From Octopus sinensis (Eukaryota), in NCBI RefSeq assembly GCF_006345805.1, contig NC_043010.1, positions 5,952,001 to 6,016,000 on the forward strand: 64,000 nt of DNA. Reading direction: 5' to 3'. Made by a program: the position numbers and the translations under genes. This document shows positions 8,469 through 39,800 of the stretch, piece after piece (the stretch's first letter is position 1; each line of letters starts with the position of its first letter). Under the pieces are notes generated by a model, which worked only from the letters and a program-made list of their open reading frames with translations, ran no database searches and was not told where the DNA came from.

Positions 8469-8507
<39 letters not shown>

Positions 8508-11151
8508 TTGTGTGTCTGTGTTTGTCCCCCTAGCATTGCTTGACAACCGATGCTGGTGTGTCTATGTCCCCGCCACTTAGTGGTTCGGCAAAAGAGACCG
8601 ATAGAATAAGTACTGGGCTTACAAAGAATAAGTTCCGGGGTCGATTTGATCGACTAAAGGCGGTGCTCCAGCATGGCCGCAGTCAAATGACTGAAACAAG
8701 TAAAAGAGAAAGAGAGAAAGGATCTACATTTCAGAGAAAAAGATATTGAAAGCATCTCACCTGTTGATGTCGTCTTAAAGTCAGATCCTCCCATCTACCA
8801 CCTGATATAGCTGTGTAGAGAGAATTTTTCCTGTACACCATTGCTTGTTCAGATTCCTTCAGATCTTTCTCCATTGTGTTCTGAACTCCAGGAGCAACAC
8901 AAATAGGATTGGACACATATCTTGATTGCATGTTTAATGCTGGTGTGACATTGTAGAACATAGATCTACTCTCATAGTTGTTGTCTGTCTGCTTCAGTCT
9001 ATGAACTATACAGATTGATATGGAGATCACTATGACAACTGATACGATCACAGCTGCTATAACAATAACAATCATCACATTCAATTGGAGACCATTACTT
9101 GATTCTGTTGTTGTCTTTGAAGGGGCCTTAAATATCTTTGATGTGCTGTTACTAACTGTGAGAGTCAAAGACAAAGTTGTTGTCGATGACAGAACTGGAC
9201 TGCCACTGTCTTTCACACCTAATTCCAGTTCATAGAATCCAGCATCATTTTGGTAAAGTGAGCGAGAGAAAGATAAGACACCAGAGTGATGGTTCATTTG
9301 AAATAAGTGTTTCTCATTACCTCTGAGTATTTCATATGTGAGGAAGGCATTGTGTTGACTGTCTCTGTCGGAGGCCCTAACAACTGTGATATCATGGTCA
9401 GAGTGGGGATGGTAGTGGACATTAAGACTGAAAGGGTCAACATTAGGGAAACTGAAATAGGGAGCATTATCATTTAAATCCATAACCTCAACAACAACAT
9501 TTGCTCTCTTCTCCAGTGATGGTGTTCCTTTATCTTTTACTAAAACCTTAAACTCATACAGGTTCTTTTCTTCTCTGTCTAGGGACTCAGTTGTGGAAAT
9601 GAATCCCACATCAGATATCTGAAATGGTAGAATATCTTTTCCATTAGATAATAGAGAATAGGTTAATTGTCCTCCGTCTCCAATATCTGGGTCTGTGGCA
9701 TTGACATATCCAACAGGGAAGTCTTTGTGTTCATTTTCATAGGTGAGAAACTTAAATATGTCCTGACTAAACTGAGGTTGTACATCATTTATGTCAGTGA
9801 CCAGCATTGAAAACTGTTTCTCTACTTTCAATGGAGGTAAACCATTATCTTGACATTTAATGGTGAAATTAAATCTCTTCTCACTCTCTCTATCTATTTC
9901 ACTCTTGACAACAACTTTGTATTTCTTTTTAGAAATTAAAATTAGCTGAAGATATCTATTTTGTAAATGACATTTCACTCGACAATTTTTTCCATTGTCA
10001 TTGTCAGTAACTTTGACATAAGCAACAAAGCTGTGAATTTTAGCTGCTTCTGAGATGACAGCTGTGTTTCCAGTTGACTCTATAACAAATTTGACATCAA
10101 TGTTTGGTGGATTATTACGATGTGTGACACCATTTATAAGGACGGTGGCTGTTGAGGACATAGGTATTTTACCATTATCTCTAGCTTCAACAACCAATTT
10201 ATAGGATTTTTTAAACTTGTATTCTTTCGTTATATGCATTTCTCCTGTTATTTCATCTAAAGTAAAGCATTGTTTAAATTTATTTAGTGTTTTAGCACTA
10301 AAAGCATAAGAAATTCTTCCATTTTCCCCTTCATCTATGTCTGCTGCAGACAGTCTTACAATAGGCTTGTTCATTTGATGTGTGTCATTTAGAGTCACAT
10401 TGTAGATATTTTGGGAAAATACAGGGAAATTATCATTTTTATCTTCCACTAAAATTTTGATGTCCAGTATACCTTCTTTTGGTGGAGATCCCCCATCTGT
10501 GGCAATCAGCTGAAGATTATAAATGCTTTTAGTCTCACGATCTAAGTTACCTTCTAAATTCAGTTGTAATAATTGACTTCCATCTGTTTTTTTAGAAACA
10601 AACAATTTGAAAGAAGTATCTTCATTCTCTACAAGTTGATAAGAGATTTTAGAATTCTGAATACTGACATCATTGTCAATGGCATTTGGAATTATTTCTT
10701 TTGTTCCAGCCAATACATTTTCATCAAATTGTATTTGAAATTCATTATTTGGAAACACTGGATAATTGTCATTGACATCGCCTATCATAAATTTGAATTC
10801 TAATATCTTGATTAAGGACTTGTCATGTTGAATTGCTACATCAAATATCCTGAAACATTCCACGTTATATCGACATAGAGATTCTGCATCCAATATGGCA
10901 GCTGAGTACAGTTTTCCTCCAGGTGTAACATTAAACAATTGAACAGTTTGATCAGTACTATCCCGGAGTATATTAAATGTCAGTTTGCTTCTATTAAACT
11001 GGGACTGTATATCATCCATTAAGTGTGTATCAGTGAAAATATTTCCAATATAGCTGTCTGTATCATTGTTCTCTTTCACATGGTAGATATGATCCACACA
11101 CCAGCAGTTGTTAGCCACCAGCACCACAATCAACAAAACCATTGAAAACAT
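2682..11151 (-). CDS. Pcdh: Protocadherin G1, join(complement 8761..11151, 7384..7531, 2682..3061), 972 aa
   Basis: Signal peptide, EC1 with C-x5-C, six cadherin repeats (DxNDN, LDRE, AxDxG motifs), TM VIVIAAVIVSVVIVISISICIV. Acceptor ttacag at 11252 and donor CAG|GTGAGA at 8761/8760; acceptor tttcag|ATG at 7531 and donor G|GTAAGT at 7384; acceptor tttcag at 3061; TAA at 2682-2684. Exon lengths 2391+148+380 are in frame. Confidence 0.93.
3351..3790 (+). mobile_element. Solo LTR, 440 bp (Ty3/gypsy-like by its 4-bp TSD)
   Basis: TGTA...TACA termini, CTCT duplication at 3347-3350 and 3791-3794, AATAAA at 3669-3674, GC-richer than its flanks. Confidence 0.7.
4703..4935 (+). mobile_element. tRNA-derived SINE, family A
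   Basis: A/B-box-like head (TGGCAGAAACGTTAG...GAGTTCAAATTCC). Close copies at 26758-26987 and 33788-34027. Confidence 0.8.
5434..5802 (+). mobile_element. Non-autonomous Helitron
   Basis: Starts TC(TCTATATATATAAA) after an A, ends with a perfect 18-bp hairpin and CTAG before a T; no TSD. Confidence 0.72.
7057..7275. mobile_element. piggyBac-like MITE
   Basis: TTAA flanks (7053-7056, 7276-7279) and TIRs CCCTTTAGT / ACTAAAGGG. Confidence 0.7.
7592..7978 (+). mobile_element. Non-autonomous Helitron (second family)
   Basis: A|TCTTTATATATAAAAG start; subterminal CCCGAGCAACGCC hairpin remnant; CTAG|T end. Confidence 0.68.
8298..8720 (+). mobile_element. tRNA-derived SINE, family B, with internal (TA)n/(TG)n
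   Basis: GGAGTGGCTGTGTGGTAAG...GGTTCAGTCCC head, CTTGGGCAAGTGTCTT core, GGCGGTGCTCCAGCATGGCC...GTAAAAGAG tail; several copies in the window. Confidence 0.82.
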
Positions 11152-11583
11152 GGCTAGTCTTCAGTAATGTTAGCAACAGAGATAGTATGCGGATAACAAT
11201 AATGAAGTATATCAAACAAATGTTGCACCCTCAGTTTTCTTCTGCCAACTCCTGTAAGCATGTAAATTTAGATTTCATTAAGCAATTAGAAAATCATAAA
11301 ATTTACAGATATGATATAAATACATTAATAATTCCATAAACATACAGATCCATGTCAAAATCTCTGCATTGTCGTTCATCTGTCTGTCTCAAAGCATTTT
11401 CATCAATATTATGCACTCTCTCACATCTAACAATATTATGTAATCCTAGAAATATTAAGTAAAGGCGTTTTATCATGAGTTAAATCTTTTTGCATTAGAT
11501 TCTTTTACTCTTCAACAATTTCTGAACCATAATAATCTACAGGTCTGACATTATTTAATAGATGAGGAAAAAAAAATATTTAC

Positions 11584-12119
11584 GTAGGTGCAAGAGTGGC
11601 TGTGTGGTAAGTAGCTTGCTTACCAACCATGTGGTTCTGGGTTCAGTCCCACTGTGTGGCACCTTGGGCAAGTGTCTTCTACTATAGCTTCGGGCCGACC
11701 AAAGCTTTGTGAGTGGATTTGGTAGATGGAAACTGAAAGAAGCCCATCGTATTTATGTATGCATATATACGTTTGTGTGTGTGTATGTTTATGTATCTGT
11801 GTTTGTCCCCCCAACATCGCTTGACAACTGATGCTGGTGTGTTTACGTCTCCGTAACTTAGCAGTTCGGCAAAAGATACCGATAGAATAAGTACTGGGCT
11901 TACAAAAGAATAAGTCCTGGGGTATCTGTGTTTGTCCCCCCAACATTGCTTGACAACCGATGCTGGTGTGTTTACGTCCCCGTAACTTTGCGGTTCGGCA
12001 AAAGATACCGATAGAATAAGTACTAGGCTTACAAACAATAAGTCCTGGAGAGGATTTGATTGACTAGAGGCAGTGCTCCTGCATGGCCACAGTCAAATGA
12101 CTTAAACAAGTAAAAGAGT
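11584..12119 (+). mobile_element. SINE family B with an internal ~129-bp tandem duplication
   Basis: Family B head and tail; the segment starting GTATCTGTGTTTGTCCCC occurs at 11793 and 11922. Confidence 0.82.
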
Positions 12120-13166: not shown

Positions 13167-13322
13167 CAAATACAAATATGTTTGAAAAATTCTAATGATA
13201 ATAAGTAAACTATTGAATTACATCATTCTCTATGTAACGACAGATTTAACTTGTGAATAAATAAACCATTTGAAAAACATATAAAAGATTACACAAGAGA
13301 ATAAGTTCTAATAAGTACTTAC

Positions 13323-14855: not shown

Positions 14856-14900
<45 letters not shown>

Positions 14901-15164: not shown

Positions 15165-15331
15165 TTAAGACTATAACGGGAGATGAAGAAAATTAAATCT
15201 AATAGTCACACATCATCGATAAATGTTCGATTGTGAGGAAAAAAAAAAACATTGCTATGACATTTTCCATACAGTGAATCTATTGCCAATGTTATGTAAT
15301 AATGGTTTGTTATGTTGTTGAAATTATGCTA

Positions 15332-18300: not shown

Positions 18301-21300
18301 GCTTACATTCTGCACTGAGGTGCTTTAGAGTGCCAGTTGTTGATATTTTCCTATCAACAAGTCTGGCAGTTCTGTACTCACGAAGACAAGAGGAAGGAAA
18401 ATTCCCTTATATGAAAAGTGGGTAAGTATTAATGTAAGGTACAAACAGTCAACATAAAACAATTCCCAATGCCACATAGATAGTACTGTAGTGAGGTCAT
18501 GTAAAAAGCCCCTTTGCTGATGCCACGTAAAAAGCTCCTGCACAGGTGCCACATAAAGAGCACCTGTGCTGATGCCATGTAAATAGCACCTGTGCCAGTG
18601 CCATGGAAAAAAAGCACTTATGCCAGTGCTATGTGAAAGCACCTGTCCCTGTGCTGCAAAAATACCACCTGTGCCGGTGCCACATAGAAAGCACCTGTGC
18701 AGGTGTACTGTTAAAAGTACCTGCGCTGGTGCCACAAAAAAGGCACCTGTGCCAGTGCCACAAAAAAAAAGCCCCTGTGCTGGTGCCACAAAAAAGGCAC
18801 CTGTGCCAGTGCCACAAAAAAAAGCCCCTGTTCTGGTGTCACAAAAAAGGCACCTGTGCCGGTGCCACAAAAAAAAGCCCCTGTGCTGGTGCCACAAAAA
18901 AGGCACCTGTGCCAGTGCCACAAAAAAAAAACCCTGTGCCAGTACCATGTATATAGCCCCTGTGCTGGTGCCACATAAAAACCACCTATGCTGATTCCAC
19001 ATAGAAAACAGCTTTACGAGTGTCATGTAAAAGTACATATACTGCTGCCATGTGAAAAGCACCCAGTACACACATTAAAGTGGTTAGCATTAGAAAGGGC
19101 AGCCAGCTGTAGAAACCAAGCCGAAACACATGACTGGAACCTGGTGCAGCTCTCCAGTTCTAGCCAAACCATCCAACCCATGCCAGCATGCAAAACATAT
19201 GTGTGTATTATCTGACACATGCTACAATGGAAAAAAGTGAACATTAAACAGACTGAAAGATGTATATTCGAGGTTTTACGTTATCATAAAACATCTCCTC
19301 ACATTTCAATATTCAATTCAAATACCTCTTGCTTTTGAAGAAATTTTGGGGATTTTTATTACTGACCTGGCAGTTCCTCGTAATGTCCAGCACTACCGAC
19401 ACTCCAACCATGACCACTATCAGTGTGAGATGACAATGTTGACATTTCACTGAATTGGTCAGCACCATTTAGTTCTCTGTAACCAGGAGGGATGCTTTCT
19501 TCTCTTGGAATAAACATCTGGAAAAATTTATTGCAGAGTGCAGTATACAATTACAATAATAAGAAGGATTCTAATAATCTAATATGGTGTTTCGTATTTA
19601 GCATTAGAATATTTTAAGTTATGAAATTATGAAGAACATTCTGTAATACTTATTTCTCCAAGATAAACTATGCACAAAAGCAGAATTTTCCCTGAAAGAT
19701 TTCCAAACACATGAAAATTTATGAACTCACCAGTTGTTTTCTTGAAGTTAGATCATCCCATCTATCAGCTGACATAGTTCTGCAGTAAATATTTTCCCTG
19801 TCTTCAATTGGTTGTTGAGGTTTCTTCAGATTTCTCTCCATTGTGCACTGAACTCCAGGAGGAACACAGGTAGGATCAAATATATATTTTGATTGGATGT
19901 TTAATGCAGGTGTAACCTTGTGGTACATATCAACACTGTTGTTATAGTTGTTGTCTGTCTGCTTCAGTCTATGAACTATACAGATCGATATAGAGATCAC
20001 TATGACAACTGATACGATCACAGCTGCTACAACAATAACAATCATCACATTCAATTGGAGACCATTACTTGATTCTGTTGTTGTCTTTGAAGGGGTCTTA
20101 AATATCTTTGATGTGCTGTTACTAACTGTTAGAGTCAAAGACAAAGTTGTTGTCGATGACAGAACTGGACTGCCACTGTCTTTCACACCTAATTCCAGTT
20201 CATAGAATCCAGCATCATTTTGGTAAAGTGAGCGAGAGAAAGATAAGACACCAGAGTGATGGTTCATTTGAAATAAGTGTTTCTCATTACCTCTGAGTAT
20301 TTCATATGTGAGGAAGGCATTGTGTTGGCTGTCTCTGTCAGAGGCCCTAACAACTGTGATATCCTGGTCAGAGTGGGGATGGTAGTGGACATTAAGACTG
20401 AAAGGGTCAACATTAGGGAAACTGAAATAGGGAGCATTATCATTTAAATCCATAACCTCAACAACAACATTTGCTCTCTTCTCCAGTGATGGTGTTCCTT
20501 TATCTTTTACTAAAACCTTAAACTCATACAGGTTCTTTTCTTCTCTGTCTAGGGACTCAGTTGTGGAAATGAATCCCACATCAGATATCTGAAATGGTAG
20601 AATATCTTTTCCATTAGATAATAGAGAATAGGTTAATTGTCCTCCATCTCCAATATCTGGGTCTGTGGCATTGACATATCCAACAGAGAAGTCTTTGTGT
20701 TCGTTTTCATAGGTGAGAAACTTAAATATGTCCTGACTAAACTGAGGTTGTACATCATTTATGTCAGTGACCAGCACAGAAAACTGTTTCTCTACTTTCA
20801 ATGGAGGTAAACCATTATCTTGACATTTAATGGTGAAATTAAAGCTCTTCTCACTCTCTCTATCTATTTCACTCTTGACAACAACTTTGTATTTCTTTTC
20901 AGAAATTAAAATTAGCTGAAGATATTTATTATGTAAATGACAGTTCACTTGTCCATTTTTTCCACCGTCACTGTCAGTAATTTTGACATAAGCAACAAAA
21001 CTGCCAATTTTAGATGCTTCTGAGATGACTGCTGTGTTTCCAGTTGACTCTATAACAAATTTGACATCGATTTTGGGAGGATTGTTAAGATGACTGATTC
21101 CAGTTACAAGAACAGTGGCAGCTGAGGACATTGGTGGGTTACCATTATCCCTAGCTTCAACATACAATTTATATATCCTTCCAAATTGGAATTCTTTCTT
21201 TAGAAACAAATATCCAGTTACTTCATCTAATCTGAAAAACTGTTCAGTATATTTTGATGTTATGGCATTGAAAAAATAAGATATTAATCCATTTTCTCCT

Positions 21301-22115
21301 TCATCTAAATCTGTAGCCGACAGCTTTGCAATCGGTTTGTTTAACTGGTGTGTGTCATTTACAGTGACATTATAATTCTTCTGAGAGAACAAAGGTTTAT
21401 TGTCATTTATATCCTTAACTAATATTTTTATATGAAGTACACCTTCTTTCTGTGGTGATCCATTATCTCTGGCAATTAGCTGAATTTCATAAATGCTTTT
21501 TGTCTCACGATCTAAGACGTTTTCGAGGTTTAGCTGCAATAAATCAGATCCATCCAACTCTTTAGAAACAATCAATTTAAAAGGAGTATTTAAATCTTCA
21601 ATCTCATAAGTGATTCTGGAATTCTGAATACTGACATCATTATCAATGGCATTTGGAATTATATACTTCGTTCCTATTGAATCATTTTCATCAAATTTTA
21701 AATGAAATTCCTCATTTGGAAACTTGGGAGAATTATCATTGACATCTTCTATTATAACTTTGATTTCTATTATCTTGAGAAAGGAATGGTCATGTTGAAC
21801 AGCTATTTCCAATATTCTGAAACATTCCACATCATATTGACACAGAATCTCTGCATCCAATATGGCAGCAGTGTATATTTGTCCTCCAGGTGTAACATTA
21901 AACAACTGAACATCTCCATCATTACCACCCTGGAGTATATTAAATGTCAGTTTGTTACTATCATCCTGAGACTGAATATTATGTAGTAAGTGTGCATCAG
22001 TGACAATATTTCCAATATAGCTGTGTATATCATTGTTCTCTTTCACATGGTAGGTATGATCCACACACCAGGAGTTGTCAGCCATCAACAACACCAACAT
22101 AACTATATATAACAT
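15332..22115 (-). CDS. Pcdh: Protocadherin G2, join(complement 19731..22115, 19367..19517, 15332..15657), 953 aa
   Basis: Same domain layout. The first ATG is at 22115 (GCCATG); the track start at 22130 is TTG. Donors GTGAGT (19730) and GTCAGT (19366); acceptors at 19517 and 15657. Lengths 2385+151+326 are in frame; ends ATDV-stop. Confidence 0.93.
16199..17913 (+). repeat. ~1.5-kb minisatellite array inside a (GAT)n-tailed retroposon
   Basis: Units TGGTGCCACATAAAAATTAC (20), TGGTGCCACGTAAAATGCACTGGTGC (26), TGGTGCCACATAAAATGTAC (20) and TGGTGCCACAAAGTGCACTGGTGC (24) form 46/44/90-bp higher-order repeats, followed by the retroposon 3' end and (GAT)4. Confidence 0.9.
18465..19200 (+). repeat. 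Second minisatellite-expanded copy of the same retroposon
   Basis: Degenerate GTGCCACAAAAAAAGGCACCTGTGCCA units followed by AAGTGGTTAGCATTAGAAAGGGC...CCAACCCATGCCAGCATG. Confidence 0.8.
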
Positions 22116-23496: not shown

Positions 23497-24031
23497 CTTA
23501 TTGAGTCACATTCTGTGATTAGTTATTTAGAAAAAAAAAAAATTCAGAAATATGACAACAAAATGAGTTGTTCCCCTTTAATATTGACCTACAAAAAATA
23601 CGAAACCAAGCAATAATTGCCAAAATAGCCTGAGCTGAAGAGATAATTTCCTTCATTACATCCACCTTCTAATTACAGATATTTAACCATTCTGTTATAT
23701 TTAACATCATTCTCTCATTAAACATTAGCTATTCTAATCATAGCCAAACCTCCAGTAATTCCAGAATTTACAGTAAGAGTTAAATTACAATTTTTTTAAT
23801 TTAGTGAAATTATAGCTTTCCTAAAATTTACTATTCTAGATGGTCTTCGAGAAAATACCATTTGTATTCCAGATTTGATATCTGGGAATCATGATGAGGT
23901 ACAAATATCTGAATAGAATAATATTCTATTATTACATCCTGTCTGTACCAGTAGAATGAACTTGTGAATAAATAAAAGTTTAAAAACATATAAAAGATTA
24001 CACAAGAGAATAAGTTCTAATAAGTACTTAC

Positions 24032-24270
24032 CAACAGGTATTAGTTATTTATATAGTTGTTGCTGTGCTGTTTCAGGGTTTTGGTAACAAAGTTATATCA
24101 GTAGCAGAAGTTCTGAGTAGTTTGGTATGTGACAGTGTTATGTAGTTCTATGGAGTTGGTTGTGTAGTATGTAATGTGTGTTGTAGCCAATGACAAGCTG
24201 TCTTTTATTCCAATGCAAGGAAACGGAAATACAGCCTCCAACTTTTGCAGTTAATGATGGGCTGACTCAC
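24032..24270 (-). promoter_or_regulatory. Promoter/leader exon of G2
   Basis: Conserved block; donor at 24031; acceptor ttacag before 22220. Confidence 0.7.
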
Positions 24271-25339
24271 AGACTGGTTTACTTAACCCACACCCACTTA
24301 CATATACATGTGAATGTGTGTTAGTACATAAATGAATAAGGAAGAAATGTCTAATGATTAGAATGAAGTGGACAGGCAATAAATTCAGTATGGAAAATAT
24401 TTCTAAATAAGGATGATATATATGAGTAAAATTATGGGAAATATGTCTAACTTTAGTAAATTTATCATACAAATTGTACTTAACTTTAAAAAAGTCATGA
24501 TGTAACCAAAGTAAAATTAATTGGTATAAAAAATAGATTTATGTAAATATTATGTTAACATAATAAAATTCCAGCGACAGTATGGAGAAAAACTTTTTAG
24601 AAAATACGAAACTGTGGCTATCAATAAACTAATAGTTGTTTGCTGGAAATCTCTGTAGCAGAGGATTAAAGGAATGCAGAATGGGAGAATGCGCATAAAG
24701 AATGATACTTTAAAAGTTGCATAATCACATTGGTGCATTTGTTAAATTAAATCAGCAGACTTCATTTTCAATTTGATAGCTTTTCTCAAAATAAAAAAAT
24801 AATATCCAAGAATTTCATAAAGAACAGAAGAATAAGGAGTTTCTAACAGATATAAATGGTACAAACTATTGCAGTAAAATATAGAATAAATCTCAGATCT
24901 TGTAACAGGACAGTAACAGCTAGGATTCTTCGAAAACGTAAATTCATAGCATAATAAAATACAAATTAAAAACTTCATGAGGTTTTCTATTTGAGGAATG
25001 GATTAGCAAAAATGTTAGAATGTTGAATAAAATGTTTGCTGTGTTTAGTTACAAACTATTATGCACTGTGCTGAAATTGCTATGAGGTTAACTTTATTTT
25101 ATCAATGCCAGACGAGATTAAATATAAGACAAGCAATGGGGTTGCTTTAATGTTATATTAAGTCTAAAATAGAAAATGAAAACTAATGGAAACTAAAACT
25201 GAAACATTAATGATCAGTGTTTTACTATAACAAGAAATATTGCTAAATCATTAATATTTTCCATTAATGTATTCCTTACTGGAAATGTATTGCCTGTCTT
25301 GAGAAAATAATGCTTTGTTATGTTCTTGAAATTATGCTA

Positions 25340-28300
25340 TTAGACGTCTGTTGCAGATAGAGGAGGGAGTGGAGGAGGTACCTGGGGTGATGAAGGTACC
25401 TTTGGTAGTGTTGTTATTTTGGGTACAGCTGGCAGAGATGGTTTACAGTCTGAAGTAAATTGACTTTTCACTGGTACTGTAGAATGTTGTTCAGTTATGT
25501 TAGATGTGGTCCCAGTAATAGTCAAAGGTGTTTGGTCAATCGAACAGGAAGTGTTATTATCGACATTAGGGTGATGGTGATATCCATATTTGTTATCTCC
25601 CCTTGATCTGTTGAGTGTGTTTTGAAGTTGATTTCTTCTATTCCATGTCTGGTCACTTTGGTAACGACACAGATCTAAAAAATAATGAGTTTGTATATAA
25701 ATTTACTTTGCAATCAAAAATTAACCTCATTAACATTTCTTTCATGTATAAAATTATTCTACATTTGTGTAGATTTGTTCGAAAGTTGGAATTTTTAATC
25801 CACAGCTTCATAATTTATTGATAATGAAGAATTTAATTAAATACAGATGTTTCTCATATTTACATTGTCTTTCTTGATTATGATCAGATTTGAAAAGAAA
25901 GTTTGGAAGGAAATATTCATGTGAATGAATTCTAATAGAACTTTTTATAATATCAATATATTTTACCTTGTTAGATATGAACAACAAACGTTAATTTGAA
26001 ATTACATTATAGTCCTGCACTTTTGGAGACCAGTGGAATGAAAGCACCCTTCCTTGAAAAGCAATGAAAGATTAGCAAAAGAAAGAGCTAAGTGTATGCA
26101 TTGCCTTAATATTCTACTCATCTGACTCATGCTAGCATACGAAAAATGAACAGGAAAAGAATGAACTAAATTAAATATATTTAATTCTCTTTCATTAGTA
26201 AATATAATATTCAATTTTAAAGTTTCTTACATCAGAAGAAATGTTTCCTGTTTTTAACTTACCTGGAAGTTCCTCATAGTGTCCAGCACTACCGACACTC
26301 CAGCCATGACCACTATCAGTGTGAGATAATGTTGACATCTCACTGAGTTGATCCGTATTGTTTAGCTCTCTGTAACCTGGAGACATAGTTTCCTCTCTTG
26401 GAATAAACATCTGAAAATATAAATCCAGTGGATCATCATGATGTTCTGAACATTTAAAAATCAAAATATAATTCAGAAATTTAAACAATTTTAAGAAACC
26501 TTCAGTTGGGAGGTTAATTTATAAAATTTGGTACAAGTCATCTGTTTGAAAGTTGAGTTCTTAAAGAAGATACAAAACATCTGTCAGAATACTGAAGCAA
26601 TTTACATTCTTTGCCTCCAAGGAATCTACTTCATCACCATTTCTTAACACAGATATTTTTGACTTGAGTTTGTAATATTTAGACAAGCTTACAACTCTAT
26701 ATTAAGAGATTTGAGTTCCGAAATATCTTTTTAAATTAGAGTGTGGATGGTATTAGAAGGCAGCGAGCTGGCAGAATCGTTAGCACGTCGGGCAAAATGC
26801 TTAGTGGTATGTCGTCTGCCGTTACATTCCGAGTTCAAATTCCGCCGAGGTCGACTTTGCCTTTCATCTTTTCGGGGTCGATAGATTAAGTACCAGTTAC
26901 GCACTAAGTTTGATGTAATCGACAATCCGTTTGTCTGACCCTGTTTGTCCCCTCTGTGTTTAGCCCCTTGTGGGTAGTAAAGAAATAGGTATTAGAGGGC
27001 AGATTTATGATTTTTTAAAAATGCATATATACTAACAGAAAAAATGCTATATTTTTACGAAAATAACAAACAAAGCTAAATTATCGATTTAATTCAATAA
27101 AACCACCATGACAAGCATCAATAACTGCTTCTACACAGAGTAGAAAGTGTTTACAAGCTCGGATTAAGAAGTTCTTGTTAGACATAACTCAAACCATGGT
27201 GGCTTTCAAAGAATCTTTGGTACTATTGGGGTGTTCATTGACATTTTACTCAAGGGTGCTCCATACGTAGTAGTCCAGTGGATTAAGAGCTAGAGAATTA
27301 AGAGGCCAAATGTTGGAGGTGATGTGATGATGCAAATTGTCAGCCATCTATTCTTGAGTCATTTGAGCCTTGTGTGATGGTACAGAATCTTGTTGAAAGG
27401 CATAAGGCCTTCCATTGCATACACTGATGACCCAAGGCTAAACTTTATCCAGAACCTCAGTATACACGGCAGCATTCACCCTAAGGCCCTGTGGGAAAAG
27501 TGAGGATGCATCATATGTCCTTCATTGCCAACAAAACCCAAAACTATAACACTTGCAGGAAATGCTGCACATTACTCTTGGAACCTCTGAAGGGTCTGCA
27601 CATAGCCATCTGTCAATTCTTCAATTAGTTTCCTGGTCCTGGTCAAAGTTTTTCTCACCTGAGGAAAAACAAAATCACACCATCTTCTAATGGATTTTAA
27701 AGTTTGTCAGAAAGTCTTCTGGATCTGATTAAATGGTTTTCTTTTGTTTTTTTCTCACGTGAATCGACCTCTCCTCATCACATAAGATTTGTATCTGATG
27801 TCTTCATGCACAACATTTCTGAATGGTTTTTCTAACAAAATGTTTTTACAATTGACCTCATTGATTTTCCTGGATTGTCTTCAATGTTTTGTCTAACTAC
27901 CTGAATAAATTCAGGTGTTCTGATAGAATCAGAGTGTTTGGAGTGTTTTTCATGCTTTGATACCAGTAATACACTTCCGTCATCATTCTGTAACTCACAC
28001 TAAATCTTGTGGACAAAAGATCTTGCAACCTTCAGAAACAAGAAATTTCTAAATCACCTTGCTTAGCCTTCAAAGCCACAATCACAGCTGACCTTTTCAT
28101 CTTAATTAGTAAGCACAAGACTTGTCATTGTTACTTTCTAAAATAGAAGTTCAATAAAAATCAAAGTAAAGACTAAAAATGCATGTGTCTTCGAATGCTG
28201 TCCATGCCCTGTACTTGATAGTTCACCAATATTATACGTGCAACATAGAAAATCTTTTCTACAGATAAAAATTAGCAAACGTTTAATTTACGTCTATTGT

Positions 28301-31300
28301 TTACTGCACTTGCATTTATATAAAAATACTAGTAAATGGGAGACCCATTTCGGTCATGAATGACCATGGGATTGCACCTAGAAAATCATCCTCCGAGGTA
28401 CAAGTCCAGGCAAGGGTGTTTATTGAAAGCCGGCAGTCGCCCATGCATACCAGCCTCCCCTCTCCACACCACTGATGTTATCCAAGGGAAAGGCAAAGGC
28501 CAATACAGCTTGGCACCAGTGATGTCGCAACTCATTTCTACAGCGGAGTTAACTGGGGCAACGTGAAATAAAGTGTCTTGCTCAAGAACACAACATGCAG
28601 CCTGGTCCGGAAATCGAGCTCACAGCCTCACGATCGTAAGCTCGATGCTCTAACCACTGAGCCATGCGCCTTCACAATAATAGCAATTATTTCAAATAGT
28701 GTAAATGTAATATTTCTCCAACCGTAAAGATTGTGGAAGTCAATAAATATTTGTTGCTTCTTGCAGCACTCATGTGGTGCTTTTCTCTTTTCAGTTCATT
28801 TTTTGAAGCAAATACATGCAGAGAAGACACAGGTACAATAGAGGGAACAATTGAAATGTAAAATAATGTGATTTTAAAATATTTTCTTAAAATGATTGCT
28901 CTGAAATATATAAATATAAAGCAGTTATACTTCATGCAGGAACACAAAAACAAATGAAGCATGCAACAGCCATTTTTACCTTGATATTTCAAATAAATAT
29001 AAGCAATTTACCTGTTCATGTCTGTTCAAAGTAAAATCGTTCCACTTATCACATGGCAGGGTTCTGCAGTAAGTATCTTCCCTATAAACCTTTGATTCTT
29101 GAGATGGCTTCAGTTTTCTCGACATTGTGTACTGAACTCCAGGAGGAACACAGGTAGGATCAAATATATATTTCGATTGGGCGTTTAATGCAGGTGTAAC
29201 CTTGTGGTACATATCAACACTGTTGTTATAGGTGTTGTCTGTCTGCTTCAGTCTATGAACTATACAGATTGATATAGAGATCACTATGACAACTGATACG
29301 ATCACAGCTGCTATAACAATAACAATCATCACATTCAATTGGAGACCATTACTTGATTCTGTTGTTGTCTTTGAAGGGGTCTTAAATATCTTTGATGTGC
29401 TGTTACTAACTATTAGGGTCAAAGACAAAGTTGTTGTCGATGACAGAACTGGACTGCCACTGTCTTTCACACCTAATTCCAGTTCATAGAATCCAGCATC
29501 ATTTTGGTAAAGTGAGCGAGAGAAAGATAAGACACCAGAGTGATGGTTCATTTGAAATAAGTGTTTCTCATTACCTCTGAGTATTTCATATGTGAGGAAG
29601 GCATTGTGTTGACTGTCTCTGTCGGAGGCCCTAACAACTGTGATATCATGGTCAGAGTGGGGATGGTAGTGGACATTAAGACTGAAAGGGTCAACATTAG
29701 GGAAACTGAAATAGGGAGCATTATCATTTAAATCCATAACCTCAACAACAACATTTGCTCTCTTCTCCAGTGATGGTGTTCCTTTATCTTTTACTAAAAC
29801 CTTAAACTCATACAGGTTCTTTTCTTCTCTGTCTAGGGACTCAGTTGTGGAAATGAATCCCACATCAGATATCTGAAATGGTAGAATATCTTTTCCATCA
29901 GATAATAGAGAATAGGTTAATTGTCCTCCATCTCCAATATCTGGGTCTGTGGCATTGACATATCCAACAGAGAAGTCTTTGTGTTCATTTTCATAGGTGA
30001 GAAACTTAAATATGTCCTGACTAAACTGAGGTTGTACATCATTTATGTCAGTGACCAGCACAGAAAACTGTTTCTCTACTTTCAATGGAGGTAAACCATT
30101 ATCTTGACATTTAATGGTGAAATTAAAGCTCTTCTCACTCTCTCTATCTATTTCACTCTTGACAACAACTTTGTATTTCTCTGCAGATACTAAGATTAGC
30201 TGAAGGTATCTGTTTTGTAAATGACACTTCACTTGTCCATTTTCTCCATTGTCATTGTCAGTAACTTTGACATAAGCAACATACCTGCCGGCTCGAATTG
30301 CTTCTGAAATGAGAATTGTGTTTCCAGTTGACTTTAAGAGAAACATGACATCAATATTTGGTGGATTATTACGATGTGTGACACCATTTACCAGAACAAT
30401 GGCTGTTGAGGACATAGGTATTTTACCACAATCCCTGGCTTCAACAGTTATTTTATACATTTTTCCGAATTGAAATTCATTTGTTATAAACATTTCTCCT
30501 GTTGTCTTATACAATTTAAAACACTGTTTGATTTTATTTGGAGTTTTAGCACCAAATATGTATGAAATTTTCCCATTTTCCCCATCATCTAAATCAGTAG
30601 CCAACAACCTCAGAATCGGTTGGCGCATTTGATGTGTGTCATTTAGAGTCACATTGTAGATATTTGGGGAAAATACAGGGAAATTATCATTTTTATCTTC
30701 CACTAATATTTTGATGTCCAGTATACCTTCTTTTGGTGGAGATCCCCCATCTGTGGCAATCAGCTGAAGATTATAAATGCTCTTAGTCTCACGATCTAAG
30801 TTACCTTCTAGAATTATCTGTAATACACTAGATTCATCTGCTCTCTTCAAAACAAACAATTTGAACGGAATACGTAAATCTCTTAGCTGATAATTGATCT
30901 TTGAGTTCTGAATACTGACATCTTTATCAATGGCATTTGGAAGTATTTCTCTTGTTCCTATCAATACGTTTTCATAGAGTTGCAGGTGAAATTCATTAAT
31001 TGGAAAGAAGGGATAATTGTCATTGATGTCTTCTATTATAACTTTGATTTCTAATATCTTCAGAAAAGAATGACCATGGTGAACTGCTATTTCCAATATC
31101 CTGAAACATTCCACATTATATTGACACAGAGTTTCTGCATCCAATATGGCAGCTGTGTGCAGTTGTCCTCCAGGTGTAACATTAAACAACTGAACACTTC
31201 CATCGGTACCACCCTGGAGTATATTAAATGAAAATTTGTTGCTCTCATCCTTAGTCTGTATATTATCCAATAAGTGCGTATCAGTGACAATATCTCCAAT

Positions 31301-31399
31301 ATAACTGTTTATATCATTGTTCTCTTTCACATGGTAGGTATGATCCACACACCTGCAGCTGTCAGCTGCCAACAGTACCAACAAAACTATGAATAACAT
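25340..31399 (-). CDS. Pcdh: Protocadherin G3, join(complement 29012..31399, 26263..26410, 25340..25674), 956 aa
   Basis: Six EC repeats and TM. ATG at 31399 (track start 31414 is TTG). GT-AG sites at 29011, 26410, 26262 and 25674. Lengths 2388+148+335 are in frame; ends ATDV-stop. Confidence 0.93.
26758..26987 (+). mobile_element. tRNA-derived SINE, family A
   Basis: Same sequence; 9-bp TSD GGTATTAGA at 26749-26757 and 26988-26996. Confidence 0.85.
27130..28240 (-). mobile_element. Decayed Tc1/mariner element, probably maT/DD37D-like; boundaries approximate
   Basis: Reverse-strand translation gives KRSAVIVALKA...VARSFVHKI...IRTPEFI...NPGKSMRSI and FQQDSVPSHKAQ...NIWPLNSLALNPLDYYVWS, with stops and frameshifts. 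TIRs not resolved. Confidence 0.7.
28337..28675 (-). mobile_element. tRNA-derived SINE, family D (reverse)
   Basis: Reverse strand reads GTGAAGGCGCATGGCTCAGTGGTTAGAGCATCG...GAGCTCGATTTCC (A/B boxes) followed by TTCTTGAGCAAGACACTT. Confidence 0.75.
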
Positions 31400-36857: not shown

Positions 36858-39800
36858 TTAGACGTCTGTTGCAGACAGGGGAGGAAGTGGAGGTACCTGG
36901 GGTGATGAAGGTACCTTTGGTAGTGTTGTTATTTTGGGTACAGCTGGCAGAGATGGTTTACAGTCTGAAGTAAACTGACTTTTCACTGGTACTGTAGAAT
37001 GTTGTCCAGTTATGTTAGATGTGGTCCCAGTAATAGTCAAAGGTGTTTGGTCAAACGAACAGGAAGTGTTATTATCGACATTAGGTTGATGGTGATATCC
37101 ATATTTGTTATCTCCCCTTGATCTGTTGAGTGTGTTTTGAAGTTGATTTCTTCTATTCCATGTCTGGTCACTTTGGTAACGGCACAGATCTAAAAATATC
37201 GAGATTTTATATAAATTTACTTTCCAATGAAAAATTAAACTCTTTAAAATTTCTTTCTTGCATAAAACTATTCTCCATCTGTGCAGGTTTGCTTGCAAAT
37301 TTTTAATTTCTAAGAAACAACTTGATAATTTATTGATAATGAAGAAGATAATTAAATTCAGATGGTTCTCATATTAACATTCTCATTTTTGATTATGGAT
37401 CAGTCTTGAGAAGGAATTTTGCAAGAAAAATATATTTTAAATTTTATACAATCAGTATCTTAACCCCTATTTCTGAAAGTGTTACAAATGGACAATAATC
37501 ATTAATTTGAAATTAAATCATAGTCCTTTTTATTTGGAGACTGGTGGAATGAAAGCTCCCTTGTTTGAAAAGCATTCAATGGATTAGTTACAGAAAGAGT
37601 CTCTATGTGTAAAGCACTGCCTTAATATCCTACTCATCTGACTCATGCTATCATAAGAAAAATGAACGTAAAAGGAATGAACAAACTAAATTAAATATAT
37701 GTATTACACTTTCGTTAGGAAATATGATATTTAATTTAAAAGTTTCTTACATCTGAAGAAATGCTTAGTATTTTTAACTTACCTGGTAGTTCCTCATAAT
37801 GTCCAGCACTACCGACACTCCAGCCATGACCACTATCAGTGTGAGATGACAATGTTGACATCTCACTAAATTGGTCAGGATTGTTCAGTTCTCTGTAACC
37901 TGGAGACATACTTTCTTCTCTGGGAATAAACATCTATAAATATAGATCCAATGGATCGTCATAATGTTCTGGACATTAAAAAAAAAGAAATATATCTCAA
38001 AGATTTAGACAATTCTAAGGAATTTTAATCATTGTATACTCTAAGTTCTAAACTTTCTGAAGTCTACAAGTAATTTCCTAGAAAGATGACCTCAAAACAT
38101 TAGTCGGAATATATATAGGTAATTTTTAGTATATTTTATTTACTCTGTCTCCAGGATATCTTCATCATCGCCATCTCAGAGTGCTATGACTTATGAGTTT
38201 ATAATATACAAAGAAGCTTCAATTAGTAAGAAAGAATCATATATTAAGTAATTTAGTCACCCCAGTAAACTGGGGATATGAAGAATAACAAGCAGAGTAA
38301 ATAATTCAATATGAAAACAGCAGTCGAGTTCCAAACTAACTTTTCAAATTGTATATGATAGATCATCAATATTACCCCAGTAACATAGGAAAACTATTCT
38401 ACAGATGAAAATAGCAGACCTGTTTTATTCATGTCTAATGCTGACTGCAATTGTACAGATAAAATTTACAATTGTCTAAAATACTGTGTATATAACATTC
38501 CTCCAACCACAAAGATTGCACGTGTCAATAAATATTTGTTACTTCTCAATTTCCTTTGCAGCATTCAGATGAAGTTTTTCTAGGAATAACCAAAATTGAA
38601 AAGAATGCAAAAATACATTTGGAAAAGATTGATGAACAATAAAGGGAATGATTTGAATGTAAAATAGTGAGAGTGGTCATCATCATCTTTGAACATCAGT
38701 TCTCGATGCTGACATGGGATGGAGAGTAGGACAGGAGTTAGCTAGCCTGAGGGTTGTCCATGCTTCATCTCCCTATTTTTCTATAGTTTCTATGAAGGGA
38801 TGCACTTCATAACACCAACCACATAACACAGTGGCCCCAACATGGGAACTTTTATGTGGAACCTCTATGGGCAATTTTACATGGCACCTGCAAAGGTGTA
38901 TTTACATGGTTGCAAAATGTTTGCTCTGAAATATATATAAAGCAATTATATTTCATGTAGCAACACAAAAACAAATGAAATATGCAACAACCCTTTTTTT
39001 TCTTGATATTTCAAATAAATATAAGCAATTTACCTGTTCAGGTCTGTTCAAAGTAAAATCATTCCACTTATCACATGGCATGGTTCTGCAGTAAGTATCT
39101 TCCCTATAAACCTTTGATTCTTGAGATGGCTTCAGTTTTCTCGACATCGTGTACTGAACTCCAGGAGGAACACAGGTAGGATCAAATATATATTTTGATT
39201 GGATGTTTAATGCAGGTGTAACCTTGTGGTACATATCAACACTGTTGTTATGGTTGCCGTCTGTCTGCTTCAACCTATGAACTATACAGATCGATATAGA
39301 GATCACTATGACAACTGATACGATCACAGCTGCTACAACAATAACAATCATCACATTCAATTGGAGACCATTACTTGATTCTGTTGTTGTCTTTGAAGGG
39401 GTCTTAAATATCTTTGATGTGCTGTTACTAACTGTTAGAGTCAAAGACAAAGTTGTTGTCGACGACAGAACTGGACTGCCACTGTCTTTCACACCTAATT
39501 CCAGTTCATAGAATCCAGCATCATTTTGGTAAAGTGAGCGAGAGAAAGATAAGACACCAGAGTGATGGTTCATTTGAAATAAGTGTTTCTCATTACCTCT
39601 GAGTATTTCATATGTGAGGAAGGCATTGTGTTGACTGTCTCTGTCAGAGGCCCTAACAACTGTGATATCATGGTCAGAGTGGGGATGGTAGTGGACATTA
39701 AGAGTGAAAGGGTCAACATTAGGGAAACTGAAATAGGGAGCATTATCATTTAAATCCATAACCTCAACAACAACATTTGCTCTCTTCTCCAGTGATGGTG

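What the first reader, a model, noticed from the sequence alone, without database searches (positions are those of the whole stretch)
8985..9960. Variable/constant protocadherin design built by homogenisation rather than shared exons
Seen: in all six paralogs about 0.95 kb running from mid-EC4 (YKVVVKSEIDRE) through EC5, EC6 and the TM to RLKQTD differs only at scattered single bases, synonymous sites included (G1 8985-9960, G2 ~19945-20930, G3 ~29235-30210, G4 ~39255-40230, G5 ~48065-49040, G6 ~55835-56810). EC1 to early EC4, and the introns of G1-G3, are clearly diverged. The two tail exons are also near-identical in G3-G7. Established: vertebrate clustered Pcdhs use EC1-EC4 for trans specificity and EC5-EC6 for cis dimers, and obtain a constant tail by splicing to shared exons; octopus Pcdhs expanded independently. 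Inference: this cluster reaches the same logic convergently. Diversified recognition domains sit on a cis-interface/TM/tail module kept identical by gene conversion, which would allow promiscuous cis-heterodimers and a combinatorial neuronal identity code.
Basis: partly seen in the sequence, partly recalled or inferred. Interest (0 to 1): 0.82.

Follow-up and report, generated by a model that had tools for sequence, protein, structure and literature searches.

The report
Octopus protocadherin genes share a homogenised block
Six neighbouring octopus protocadherin genes keep the membrane-proximal 0.94 kb of their main exon almost identical by copying it among themselves (gene conversion) while their outer binding domains stay diverged. 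Fish and mammal protocadherin clusters are already known to do this, so here it has arisen independently.

Summary
In all six paralogs (- strand) a 939-bp block, from mid-EC4 through EC5, EC6 and the TM to RLKQTD, has 31 variable columns (98.7% mean pairwise identity). The sequence on either side in the same exon is about 83% identical.

- **Synonymous divergence:** dS is 0.03 in the block and 0.41 in EC1-EC4a (0.7-0.84 in EC2-EC3).
- **Source:** the window is Octopus sinensis CM016872.1.
- **Other species:** the same block is homogenised in O. vulgaris and Argonauta hians, and more weakly in O. bimaculoides.
- **Trees:** EC1-EC4a groups cross-species orthologs (100% bootstrap). The block groups all copies by species (100%). 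This is concerted evolution by gene conversion.

Recent duplication, codon-level constraint and assembly collapse are all contradicted.

Fugu, zebrafish and human clustered Pcdhs also homogenise the 3' part of their variable exons, with a discrete boundary in EC4/EC5. Gene conversion had been suggested for octopus only in general terms.

The near-constant tail holds only for exon 3 of G3-G8. Conversion tracts also occur inside EC2-EC4. The proposed cis-heterodimer and neuronal-code function was not tested here.

In passing I found a conserved promoter-like element with a 5' exon, once per gene.

The parts
8983..9921 (-). G1 homogenised block (second half of EC4, EC5, EC6, TM, first 6 cytoplasmic residues)
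   Evidence: 31 of 939 variable columns among six paralogs, dS 0.02-0.056
19953..20891 (-). G2 homogenised block
29237..30175 (-). G3 homogenised block
39259..40197 (-). G4 homogenised block
48070..49008 (-). G5 homogenised block
55838..56776 (-). G6 homogenised block
8761..11151 (-). G1 large coding exon (signal peptide, EC1-EC6, TM, about 70 aa juxtamembrane); donor CAG|GTGAGA
   Evidence: ORF, Pfam, donor
19731..22115 (-). G2 large coding exon (ATG at 22115)
29012..31399 (-). G3 large coding exon (ATG at 31399)
39034..41421 (-). G4 large coding exon
47845..50232 (-). G5 large coding exon
55613..57999 (-). G6 large coding exon, with a 1-bp deletion in a T run near 56940 that breaks the frame
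25343..25675 (-). G3 tail exon 3 (coding part). It is 97-99% identical to exon 3 of G4 (36861-37190), G5 (45664-45993), G6 (53525-53857) and G7 (62251-62580). The G1 (2712-3062) and G2 (15335-15676) versions are 72-81% identical to these
   Evidence: tblastn with the tails of public models; identity matrix; unit alignment
26264..26410 (-). G3 tail exon 2, with AG/GT splice sites. Counterparts: G1 7385-7531, G2 19368-19517, G4 37772-37933, G5 46553-46714, G6 54443-54604, G7 63168-63329. Identity is 87-95% among G3-G7
24031..24277 (-). Conserved promoter-like element plus putative 5' non-coding exon. It contains a TGAGTCA motif, an AATAAAAG motif, an inverted CCAAT box and a conserved GT donor. 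It occurs once per gene unit. Other copies are at about 1596-1832, 13322-13571, 35553-35799, 44356-44602, 52216-52462 and 60941-61187
   Evidence: Seven exact copies of a 23-mer and of the donor 16-mer, none expected by chance. Conserved in O. vulgaris, O. bimaculoides and Argonauta. The exon is read in an O. vulgaris read-through gene model

Best explanation
The window holds six (of at least ten) tandem, same-orientation protocadherin genes of one Octopus sinensis subcluster. Each is its own transcription unit: a putative 5' non-coding exon, a 2.4-kb exon encoding the signal peptide, six cadherin repeats, the TM and a juxtamembrane stretch, and two private tail exons.

Recurrent non-allelic gene conversion between the large exons keeps their 3' 0.94 kb (second half of EC4, EC5, EC6, TM) nearly identical within a species. 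The block still diverges between species. This is concerted evolution, and it is shown here.

The rest is inferred. Conversion tracts that reach into EC2-EC3 do occur but are rarer or are mostly removed, so EC2-EC3 remain the diversified part. High identity in the block in turn favours further conversion. The functional reading is that all members of a subcluster share one membrane-proximal module and differ in a membrane-distal recognition cassette. In vertebrate clustered Pcdhs that arrangement corresponds to a shared cis-interaction and surface-delivery module plus isoform-specific trans binding. Whether octopus proteins use it in that way is untested.
For: 1. **Regional drop in dS.** In O. 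sinensis the per-domain values are EC1 0.31, EC2 0.71, EC3 0.84, EC4a 0.25, EC4b 0.038, EC5 0.018, EC6 0.032, TM 0.026, and the cytoplasmic rest of exon 1 0.20. Synonymous polymorphism in amino-acid-identical codons is 4.7% in the block against 37% upstream, p = 4e-20.
2. **An internal island.** The block is flanked on both sides by diverged sequence within one exon. A single unequal crossover cannot produce that.
3. **Tree incongruence.** In EC1-EC4a, Os_G9 groups with its O. bimaculoides ortholog in 100% of bootstraps and the O. sinensis/vulgaris copies never form a clade. In the block, all 11 O. sinensis/vulgaris copies form a clade in 100% and G9+ortholog in 0% (protein trees).
4. **Species-level differences.** There are 95 fixed differences in 936 block sites between the Octopus copies and the three Argonauta copies. 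Within-species dS is 0.01-0.056. Between-species dN/dS is about 0.4, so the block is not frozen by purifying selection.
5. **Conversion is recent.** The O. vulgaris ortholog of G2 matches Os_G2 at 217 of 218 bases just downstream of the block, but at only 750 of 764 bases inside it. There it is equidistant from all O. sinensis paralogs, and it shares variants with another O. vulgaris paralog. The O. vulgaris G1 ortholog carries a G3-type tract of about 0.8-1.25 kb.
6. **Shuffled residual variants.** Of 17 informative sites in the block, 67 of 136 site pairs fail the four-gamete test, giving Rm = 8.
7. **GC3 is raised** in the block, 0.34 against 0.26, as in converted fugu Pcdh regions.
8. **Seen in independent assemblies and other subclusters.** Three other species show the pattern. 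So do other Pcdh subclusters: groups of 5 (O. sinensis) and of 9 and 11 (Argonauta) paralogs have EC5-TM 97-100% identical but EC2-3 55-84% identical. The reverse pattern was never seen in 1487 within-species pairs.
Against: - No sequencing reads were available. Nothing in the sequence or tools says how the O. sinensis assembly was sequenced or polished; if short reads were used to polish it, they could homogenise or shuffle variants among near-identical copies. The 1-bp homopolymer frameshift in G6 shows that small errors, or real decay, exist.
- O. bimaculoides paralogs are much less homogenised (block dS 0.12-0.15), so the process is not uniform across species.
- The G4-G7 units are 90-95% identical over their whole length. 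For those pairs, part of the block's similarity is simply recent duplication.
- The GC3 rise is modest and could partly reflect amino-acid composition.
- Whether the boundary is set by selection or by the identity requirement of recombination is unresolved. Conversion clearly also occurs in EC2-EC4.
- The functional (cis-module) part has no direct support. The PDB sequence search matches delta2 protocadherins about as well as clustered ones.
Confidence: 0.88

Rival explanations
1. The genes duplicated very recently and EC1-EC4 then diverged fast under positive selection. On this view the block is simply what has not yet changed.
For: The G4, G5, G6 and G7 units are 90-95% identical over 8 kb including intergenic DNA, so some paralogs are young.
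Against: Synonymous divergence in EC2-EC3 is 0.7-0.84 and dN/dS there is 0.27-0.34, not above 1. The introns and flanks of G1-G3 are 45-85% identical or unalignable. The paralog lineages predate the O. sinensis / O. bimaculoides split (orthologous pairs at 100% bootstrap), yet their blocks are closer to each other than to their orthologs.
Confidence: 0.02
2. The block is held constant by selection alone. This would be very strong purifying selection on the protein, plus constraint on synonymous sites (for example RNA structure for A-to-I editing, or exonic regulatory elements), with no exchange between copies.
For: The block encodes the TM and membrane-proximal domains, which are generally the more conserved part of protocadherins. 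In 98% of 1485 within-species pairs, EC5-TM is more conserved than EC2-3.
Against: The block differs between species: 95 fixed differences against Argonauta, with dN 0.10 and dS 0.25. It is nearly identical within species. Paralogs older than the O. sinensis / O. bimaculoides split are closer to each other (dS 0.01-0.056) than to their orthologs (0.074-0.148). Variants are shuffled among copies. Orthologs differ more in the block than in the adjacent sequence. Block dS between O. sinensis and O. bimaculoides (0.08) is similar to upstream non-coding divergence (5-10%), so no special synonymous constraint is needed.
Confidence: 0.03
3. The identical block is an assembly artefact: a collapsed or mis-polished consensus written into several copies.
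For: The window is from the O. sinensis assembly GCA_006345805.1, for which no reads were available. G6 carries a homopolymer frameshift.
Against: The copies are not identical. They carry 31 scattered differences, many shared by subsets of copies. The same block structure is present in three other, independently produced assemblies: O. vulgaris GCA_951406725.2, O. bimaculoides GCA_001194135.2 and Argonauta hians GCA_054771915.1. Each has its own species-specific substitutions.
Confidence: 0.03
4. Unequal crossing-over and birth-and-death turnover of whole units, rather than patch-wise gene conversion, homogenise the array.
For: Whole-unit similarity of G4-G7 shows that unit duplication is active. 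Copy content differs between species.
Against: The block is an island bounded on both sides by diverged sequence in every pair involving G1 or G2. Further separate islands lie in exon 3 and in the promoter-like element. Short mosaic tracts of 0.1-1.2 kb occur within otherwise orthologous genes. These features need non-reciprocal patches or double exchanges.
Confidence: 0.05

Closest known systems
Regional gene conversion in teleost clustered protocadherins (fugu Pcdh2 alpha/gamma subclusters; zebrafish), also detectable in human, mouse and Xenopus
   Same: Tandem paralogs whose large exon has a diverged 5' part (EC1-EC3) and a 3' part (EC4/5 to TM) that is more than 99% identical at the nucleotide level. 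There is a discrete boundary in EC4 or EC5, the homogenised consensus is specific to each subcluster, GC3 is raised in the converted part, and dS is lowest in EC5/EC6 and highest in EC2/EC3 (PMC1852091; PMC4978886). All of these are seen here.
   Different: The octopus array arose by an independent expansion (stated in PMC9068888, and PMC4978886). The units are whole multi-exon genes with private tails, not variable exons spliced to constant exons. The GC3 shift is smaller (0.26 to 0.34, against about 0.40 to 0.60 in fugu). In Argonauta EC1 is also homogenised.
Vertebrate alpha/gamma Pcdh constant exons (shared cytoplasmic tail by cis-alternative splicing)
   Same: The outcome for part of the array is similar. 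G3-G8 have an almost identical distal cytoplasmic tail (exon 3, 97-99%).
   Different: Every octopus gene has its own exons 2 and 3. Tail similarity is not universal, since G1 and G2 are 72-82% identical to the rest. It is achieved by duplication and conversion, not by splicing.
Earlier statements on cephalopod Pcdh evolution
   Same: Styfhals et al. 2019 (PMC6339937), citing Albertin et al. 2015, say that clustered octopus Pcdhs are very similar, possibly through recent duplication or gene conversion. Albertin et al. 2022 (PMC9068888) say lineage-specific subfamilies suggest duplication and homogenisation through gene conversion.
   Different: Those are whole-gene, tree-level remarks. In the searchable library I found no domain-resolved description: no mention of the block, its boundaries, regional dS, ortholog/paralog incongruence, or the EC2-EC3 variable cassette. 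Albertin 2015 and Noonan 2004 themselves could not be read.
Concerted evolution of other tandem gene families (globins, MHC class I, KRTAP, rDNA)
   Same: Paralogs are closer within a species than orthologs are between species. Mosaic tracts and GC-biased signatures are present.
   Different: Here homogenisation is confined to a defined part of one exon, while a neighbouring part of the same exon stays diversified.

Membership tests
Protocadherin (six-EC, single-pass cadherin-superfamily protein) | Six extracellular cadherin repeats followed by one TM helix | tested here: met
   Pfam finds Cadherin in 5 stretches, Cadherin_2 at the N-terminus and a CELSR2-like cadherin domain at the EC6 position. 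Five linker motifs of the DxNDN type and a hydrophobic TM segment are visible in the translations. The protein aligns end to end with the gammaB4 EC1-6 structure 6E6B (query 80-666 to chain 49-631) and with Pcdh10 6VG4.
Vertebrate-style clustered protocadherin organisation | Tandem array of paralogs in one orientation, each with the whole ectodomain and TM in one large exon | tested here: met
   Six ORFs of 2.4 kb lie on the - strand at 8-10 kb spacing. Three more lie beyond the window in L004.
Vertebrate-style clustered protocadherin organisation | Variable exons spliced to shared constant exons that encode a common cytoplasmic tail | tested here: not met
   Each unit has its own exon 2 and exon 3 with AG/GT splice sites. 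This agrees with PMC9068888.
Vertebrate-style clustered protocadherin organisation | Own promoter with a conserved sequence element upstream of every variable exon | tested here: inconclusive
   A conserved element of about 100 bp plus a putative 5' exon occurs once per unit and is conserved as far as Argonauta. Promoter activity was not shown, and the motif is unrelated to the vertebrate CSE.
Vertebrate-style clustered protocadherin organisation | Orthology to vertebrate alpha/beta/gamma clusters | not tested
   The literature states independent expansion. The PDB search scores clustered and delta2 Pcdhs alike.
Regional gene conversion / concerted evolution of Pcdh paralogs | Regional collapse of synonymous divergence among paralogs, with a discrete boundary | tested here: met
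   dS is 0.018-0.038 in EC4b-EC6 and 0.71-0.84 in EC2-EC3. The density of variable columns jumps at alignment column 1245.
Regional gene conversion / concerted evolution of Pcdh paralogs | In the converted region paralogs are closer than orthologs, and the tree conflicts with that of the unconverted region | tested here: met
   Bootstrap support is 100% against 0% in opposite directions for the two partitions. The dS matrix is and the O. vulgaris G2 ortholog comparison.
Regional gene conversion / concerted evolution of Pcdh paralogs | Mosaic tracts and recombination signal | tested here: met
   In a runs test, 12 of 55 pairs reach p < 0.001 in EC1-EC4a. In the block, 67 of 136 four-gamete tests fail, giving Rm = 8. 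Tracts are mapped.
Regional gene conversion / concerted evolution of Pcdh paralogs | Raised GC3 in the converted region (GC-biased conversion) | tested here: met
   GC3 is 0.33-0.35 in the block against 0.25-0.30 upstream in all O. sinensis and O. vulgaris copies. The shift is smaller in O. bimaculoides and Argonauta.
Clustered-Pcdh recognition unit (trans specificity in EC1-EC4, promiscuous cis dimer through EC5-EC6) | EC5-EC6 mediated cis (hetero)dimerisation and EC1-EC4 antiparallel homophilic trans binding | not testable with these tools
   This needs biophysics or cell-aggregation assays. Only the distribution of variability (EC2-EC3 variable, EC4b-EC6 constant) is consistent with it.

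The most novel reading that the evidence does not exclude
Octopod protocadherin clusters have convergently arrived at the full vertebrate clustered-Pcdh logic without shared exons. That logic has three parts. The first is an EC2-EC3 specificity cassette kept diverse. The second is a subcluster-wide EC4b-EC6-TM module, and in part a tail, kept interchangeable by ongoing gene conversion so that all isoforms can pair in cis and co-evolve as one interface. The third is a conserved per-gene promoter element that would allow combinatorial isoform choice in neurons.
Probability: 0.3. Interest if true: 0.8.

Novelty: new member of a known kind. Interest (0 to 1): 0.55.

Why it matters
1. **It settles an open alternative for this subcluster.** The octopus literature left open whether similar clustered Pcdhs reflect recent duplication or gene conversion. 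Here it is conversion, it is regional, and it has continued since the O. sinensis / O. vulgaris split.
2. **It shows convergence with vertebrates.** An independently expanded invertebrate Pcdh array has the same pattern of variability as teleost and mammalian clusters: EC2-EC3 variable, EC4/5-TM constant, and a consensus specific to each subcluster. That argues for a common structural or functional constraint. It also predicts which domains set specificity in cephalopod Pcdhs, which cell-aggregation and biophysical assays can test directly.
3. **It has practical consequences.**
   - Whole-gene trees and dS dating of cephalopod Pcdh expansions will be biased towards young, lineage-specific bursts if homogenised regions are included. 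An example that may be affected is the recent 8-14 Ma expansion reported in PMC9795677. I did not check that paper's method.
   - Orthology should be called from EC2-EC3.
   - Short-read or 3'-biased single-cell RNA-seq cannot separate paralogs that share the block, exon 3 and the 5' exon.

Tried and rejected
- **Rfam scan** of the whole window at gathering thresholds found no match. No known structured RNA explains the nucleotide conservation.
- **Key papers not available.** Albertin et al. 2015 and Noonan et al. 2004 are not held. Their content is cited only through papers that quote them.
- **First PDB query failed** because of a wrong frame and was repeated. The result cannot tell clustered-type from delta2-type protocadherins, so it gives no handle on cis-dimer capacity.
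- **Structure prediction was considered and dropped.** A monomer model cannot test a cis interface, and I could not list the vertebrate interface residues reliably from memory.
- **Synonymous-site constraint as the sole cause was rejected.** Paralogs are closer than orthologs, and block dS between O. sinensis and O. bimaculoides is about the same as upstream non-coding divergence.
- **Direction of one conversion event is unresolved.** For the G1/G3-type tract that differs between O. sinensis and O. vulgaris, I could not tell which species was converted, because the O. vulgaris G3 ortholog was not fetched.
- **The 248-aa ORF at 18325-19071** lies in a 53-bp minisatellite and is not a gene.
Full report
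**What is in the window.** Six ORFs of about 2.4 kb lie on the - strand at 8-10 kb spacing. Each encodes a signal peptide, six cadherin repeats, a TM helix and about 70 cytoplasmic residues (translations; Pfam; full-length alignment to the gammaB4 EC1-6 structure 6E6B and the Pcdh10 structure 6VG4).

Each large exon ends at a canonical donor, CAG|GTRAGT or CAG|GTAAAT. It is followed by its own exon 2 (about 150 bp) and exon 3 (about 330 bp coding). I located these with the C-terminal parts of public gene models, and they have AG/GT borders. A seventh gene has only its tail exons in the window.

Window 60026-64000 is 100% identical to Octopus sinensis CM016872.1 (locus L004). The window is therefore about 5,952,001-6,016,000 of that chromosome. 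Three more paralogs (G7-G9) lie just beyond its end.

In an alignment of the six large exons, the stretch from YKVVVKSEIDRE to RLKQTD has 31 variable columns out of 939 (mean pairwise identity 0.987). Upstream there are 457 of 1223 (0.829), and in the cytoplasmic remainder of the same exon 83 of 219 (0.837). At the upstream rate the probability of so few is about 2e-140.

Exact block coordinates are G1 8983-9921, G2 19953-20891, G3 29237-30175, G4 39259-40197, G5 48070-49008 and G6 55838-56776.

Synonymous sites are included. Nei-Gojobori dS averages 0.030 in the block, and is flat at 0.020-0.056 whichever pair is compared. In EC1-EC4a it averages 0.41 (0.12-0.65). Restricting to codons that encode the same amino acid in all six genes, 14 of 295 are polymorphic in the block against 70 of 187 upstream (p = 4e-20).

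By domain, dS is EC1 0.31, EC2 0.71, EC3 0.84, EC4a 0.25, EC4b 0.038, EC5 0.018, EC6 0.032, TM 0.026 and cytoplasmic 0.20.

**Background divergence.** Self-comparison of the window and unit alignments show that G4-G7 are young whole-unit duplicates, 90-95% identical including intergenic DNA. The non-coding DNA of G1, G2 and G3 is only 45-85% identical to the others, or unalignable.

Against that background, G3 compared with G4/G5 shows separate islands of 97-99% identity:
- the block, continuing at 92-97% to the end of exon 1;
- exon 3;
- an element of about 440 bp downstream of exon 3.

Exon 2 is only 87-89% identical between G3 and G4-G7. The tails of G1 and G2 are 72-82% identical to the rest. 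The statement that the tail exons are near-identical in G3-G7 is therefore true for exon 3 only.

**It is concerted evolution, not recent duplication, constraint or artefact.** A protein search found a distinct subfamily (P0001-P0017) in O. sinensis, O. vulgaris, O. bimaculoides and Argonauta hians. The next hits drop to about 52% identity. I fetched DNA for arrays in all four species and built codon alignments of 17 large exons.

Within-species paralog dS, upstream partition against block:
- O. sinensis/vulgaris: 0.12-0.69 against 0.010-0.056
- Argonauta: 0.37-0.47 against 0.010-0.034
- O. bimaculoides: 0.61-0.68 against 0.116-0.150

Between species the block is not conserved to the same degree. 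Block dS is 0.074-0.148 for O. sinensis against O. bimaculoides. For Octopus against Argonauta it is 0.23-0.30, with dN about 0.10. There are 95 fixed differences in 936 sites between the 11 O. sinensis/vulgaris copies and the 3 Argonauta copies.

Bootstrapped NJ trees conflict completely (protein trees). In EC1-EC4a, Os_G9 pairs with its O. bimaculoides ortholog (100%) and the O. sinensis/vulgaris copies never form a clade (0%). In the block, all O. sinensis/vulgaris copies form a clade (100%) and the ortholog pair is never recovered (0%).

Upstream non-coding DNA of that ortholog pair is 90-95% identical. The block's between-species dS of 0.08 therefore looks neutral, and no special synonymous constraint is needed.

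Because the block is bounded by diverged sequence on both sides within one exon, single unequal crossovers cannot explain it. Patch-wise non-reciprocal exchange can.

**Conversion is ongoing and not confined to the block.** The O. vulgaris locus L003 is syntenic with window 747-20716 at 95-98% identity.

The O. vulgaris ortholog of G2 matches Os_G2 at 217 of 218 bases immediately 3' of the block. Inside the block it matches at only 750 of 764 bases, no better than it matches any other O. sinensis paralog. It lacks the private variants of G2, and it shares three variants with another O. vulgaris paralog. Two of those are in no O. sinensis copy and one is found only in G3.

The O. vulgaris ortholog of G1 is 97-100% G1-like over most of the exon. 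It has one unexplained patch in late EC1 (alignment columns 390-510) where it is only 78% identical to G1. From the second half of EC3 into the block it is 96-100% identical to Os_G3 and only 70-91% identical to G1. This tract is about 0.8-1.25 kb.

G2 carries EC2-EC3 sequence 95-100% identical to G4/G6, although its flanks are 72-88% identical.

A Sawyer-type runs test on polymorphic sites of EC1-EC4a gives p < 0.001 for 12 of 55 pairs. In the block, 67 of 136 pairs of informative sites fail the four-gamete test, giving a minimum of 8 exchange events. GC3 is higher in the block (0.34 against 0.26), the direction expected from GC-biased conversion.

**Generality.** Boundaries differ by species. 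In Argonauta the homogenised 3' region starts at the beginning of EC4 and runs further into the cytoplasmic part. EC1 is also homogenised there (dS 0.06). Only EC2-EC3 vary (dS 0.72 and 1.37).

I also looked at the more distant hits P0018-P0120, which are other Pcdh subclusters. I scored 1487 within-species pairs for EC5-TM at least 95% identical with EC2-EC3 at most 85% identical:
- O. sinensis: 9 pairs, forming one group of 5
- O. vulgaris: 2 pairs
- Argonauta: 91 pairs, forming groups of 9 and 11
- O. bimaculoides: none
- the reverse pattern: none

A constant 3' block specific to each subcluster is thus a general property of octopod Pcdh arrays. It is weaker in O. bimaculoides.

**Comparison with what is known.** This is the pattern described for fugu. 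There the 3' region of variable exons is more than 99% identical among paralogs of a subcluster, the 5' region is diverged, the boundary in EC4 or EC5 is discrete, GC3 is raised, and the consensus is subcluster-specific (PMC1852091). It has also been reported for zebrafish, human, mouse and others, with the lowest dS in EC5/EC6 and the highest in EC2/EC3 (PMC4978886).

For cephalopods I found only whole-gene remarks. Similarity is described as possibly due to recent duplications or gene conversions (PMC6339937), and as a combination of duplication and homogenisation through gene conversion (PMC9068888). The latter paper also states that cephalopods do not splice to shared exons. Searches for a domain-resolved account found nothing.

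But framing it as homogenisation instead of shared exons misses that vertebrates use homogenisation for this very region as well.

**How it most likely works.**
- *Shown:* recurrent non-allelic conversion among tandem large exons homogenises EC4b-TM within each species, while the region diverges between species.
- *Inferred:* conversions that overwrite EC2-EC3 are rarer or mostly eliminated, and high identity in the block feeds back to favour more conversion.
- *Inferred by analogy with vertebrate clustered Pcdhs:* the shared module serves cis association, surface delivery or processing that is common to all isoforms of a subcluster, and EC2-EC3 carry isoform-specific trans recognition.

Octopus brain cells express about 19-21 Pcdh genes each (PMC9712504). 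This is compatible with a combinatorial use but does not demonstrate it. The cis-dimer claim could not be tested here.

**Caveats.** No reads were available. G6 has a T6-to-T5 frameshift that may be an assembly error or a real pseudogene. If it is real, a decaying copy still carries a 99% identical block, which fits a mechanistic process. Some shuffling of block variants within the O. sinensis assembly could in principle be a polishing artefact. The cross-species evidence does not depend on it.

**Seen in passing.** Once per gene unit, 1.9-4.1 kb upstream of the next gene's ATG, there is a conserved element containing three recognisable motifs:
- TGTGAGTCAGCCCATCATTAACTGC
- an AATAAAAG motif
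- GACAGCTTGTCATTGGCTACAAC, which is an inverted CCAAT box

About 145 nt further on there is a perfectly conserved donor, TG|GTAAGTAC. There are seven exact copies in the window. It is present once per unit in O. vulgaris and O. bimaculoides, and with one mismatch in the 23-mer in Argonauta.

In G2-G6 an AG acceptor sits 16-18 nt before the ATG. An O. vulgaris gene model reads through this exon. I interpret it as the core promoter plus a 5' non-coding exon of each gene. That would parallel the per-exon promoters of vertebrate clusters, but this is an inference only.

**Verdict.** The feature is real and general, and its mechanism is well supported. It is a convergent new instance of a known process, not a new design. 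The functional reading is plausible but untested.

Noticed in passing
window 24031-24277 (-); also about 1596-1832, 13322-13571, 35553-35799, 44356-44602, 52216-52462, 60941-61187: A promoter-like element occurs once per gene. It has a TGAGTCA motif, an AATAAAAG motif and an inverted CCAAT 23-mer that is exact in all 7 copies. About 145 nt further on there is an exactly conserved splice donor. It lies 1.9-4.1 kb upstream of the next gene's ATG. It is conserved in O. vulgaris, O. bimaculoides and Argonauta, and is 99% identical among the G3-G7 units. It is probably the core promoter plus a 5' non-coding exon.
   Followed up: partly
window about 56940 (G6, - strand): A 1-bp deletion in a T run (T6 in G4, T5 in G6) splits G6 into two ORFs (55526-56872 and 56869-57999). 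It is either an assembly indel or a young pseudogene. Its block is still about 99% identical to the others.
   Followed up: partly
L003 9629-12055 (O. vulgaris ortholog of G1) compared with window G1 and G3: The ortholog is G1-like except from the second half of EC3 into the block, where it is 96-100% identical to O. sinensis G3. This is a conversion tract of 0.8-1.25 kb that differs between the two sister species. Which species was converted is unresolved.
   Followed up: partly
window about 21020-21620 (G2 EC2-EC3) compared with G4 and G6: G2 carries EC2-EC3 sequence 95-100% identical to G4/G6, although its EC1, EC4a and flanks are 72-88% identical to them. Two otherwise distinct paralogs therefore share the presumed specificity domains.
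   Followed up: partly
L001 (Argonauta hians) large exons 2238-4739, 9944-12460, 17748-20291: In Argonauta EC1 (dS 0.06) and all of EC4 are homogenised as well. Only EC2-EC3 vary (dS 0.72 and 1.37).
   Followed up: yes
L002 (O. bimaculoides) large exons 3-2159, 9881-12418, 20477-22915: Homogenisation is much weaker in O. bimaculoides (block dS 0.12-0.15). None of 231 O. bimaculoides pairs from other subclusters showed the constant-3'/variable-5' pattern at the thresholds used. The cause is unknown.
   Followed up: partly
window 8761-8982 and equivalents (cytoplasmic end of exon 1): The juxtamembrane cytoplasmic segment right after the block has dN/dS of about 1.1 among O. sinensis paralogs (dN 0.19-0.22). 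It is either relaxed or diversifying, in sharp contrast to the block.
   Followed up: no
window 16200-17754, 18503-19001, 163-376: GC-richer minisatellites (periods 46/90 bp and 53 bp) lie in intron 2 of G2 and at the start of the window. The 248-aa ORF at 18325-19071 lies inside one and is not a gene.
   Followed up: partly
window 8276-8714, 11585-12120, 14668-15110, 22324-22735, 31623-32032 (inverted); also 4703-4941, 26755-26992, 33788-34030: Two dispersed repeat families, of about 430 bp and about 240 bp and 84-92% identical, flank several large exons. They are probably transposable elements and were not classified.
   Followed up: no
L004 1-5498; L003 1-9635; proteins P0008, P0009: Public gene models in this array include fused or read-through products. 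Examples are a 6653-residue model in O. sinensis, a 1619-residue model and a 1091-residue model with a duplicated tail in O. vulgaris, and P0009, which runs into the next gene's 5' exon. None of the window's six genes appeared as its own protein among the 120 hits listed.
   Followed up: no
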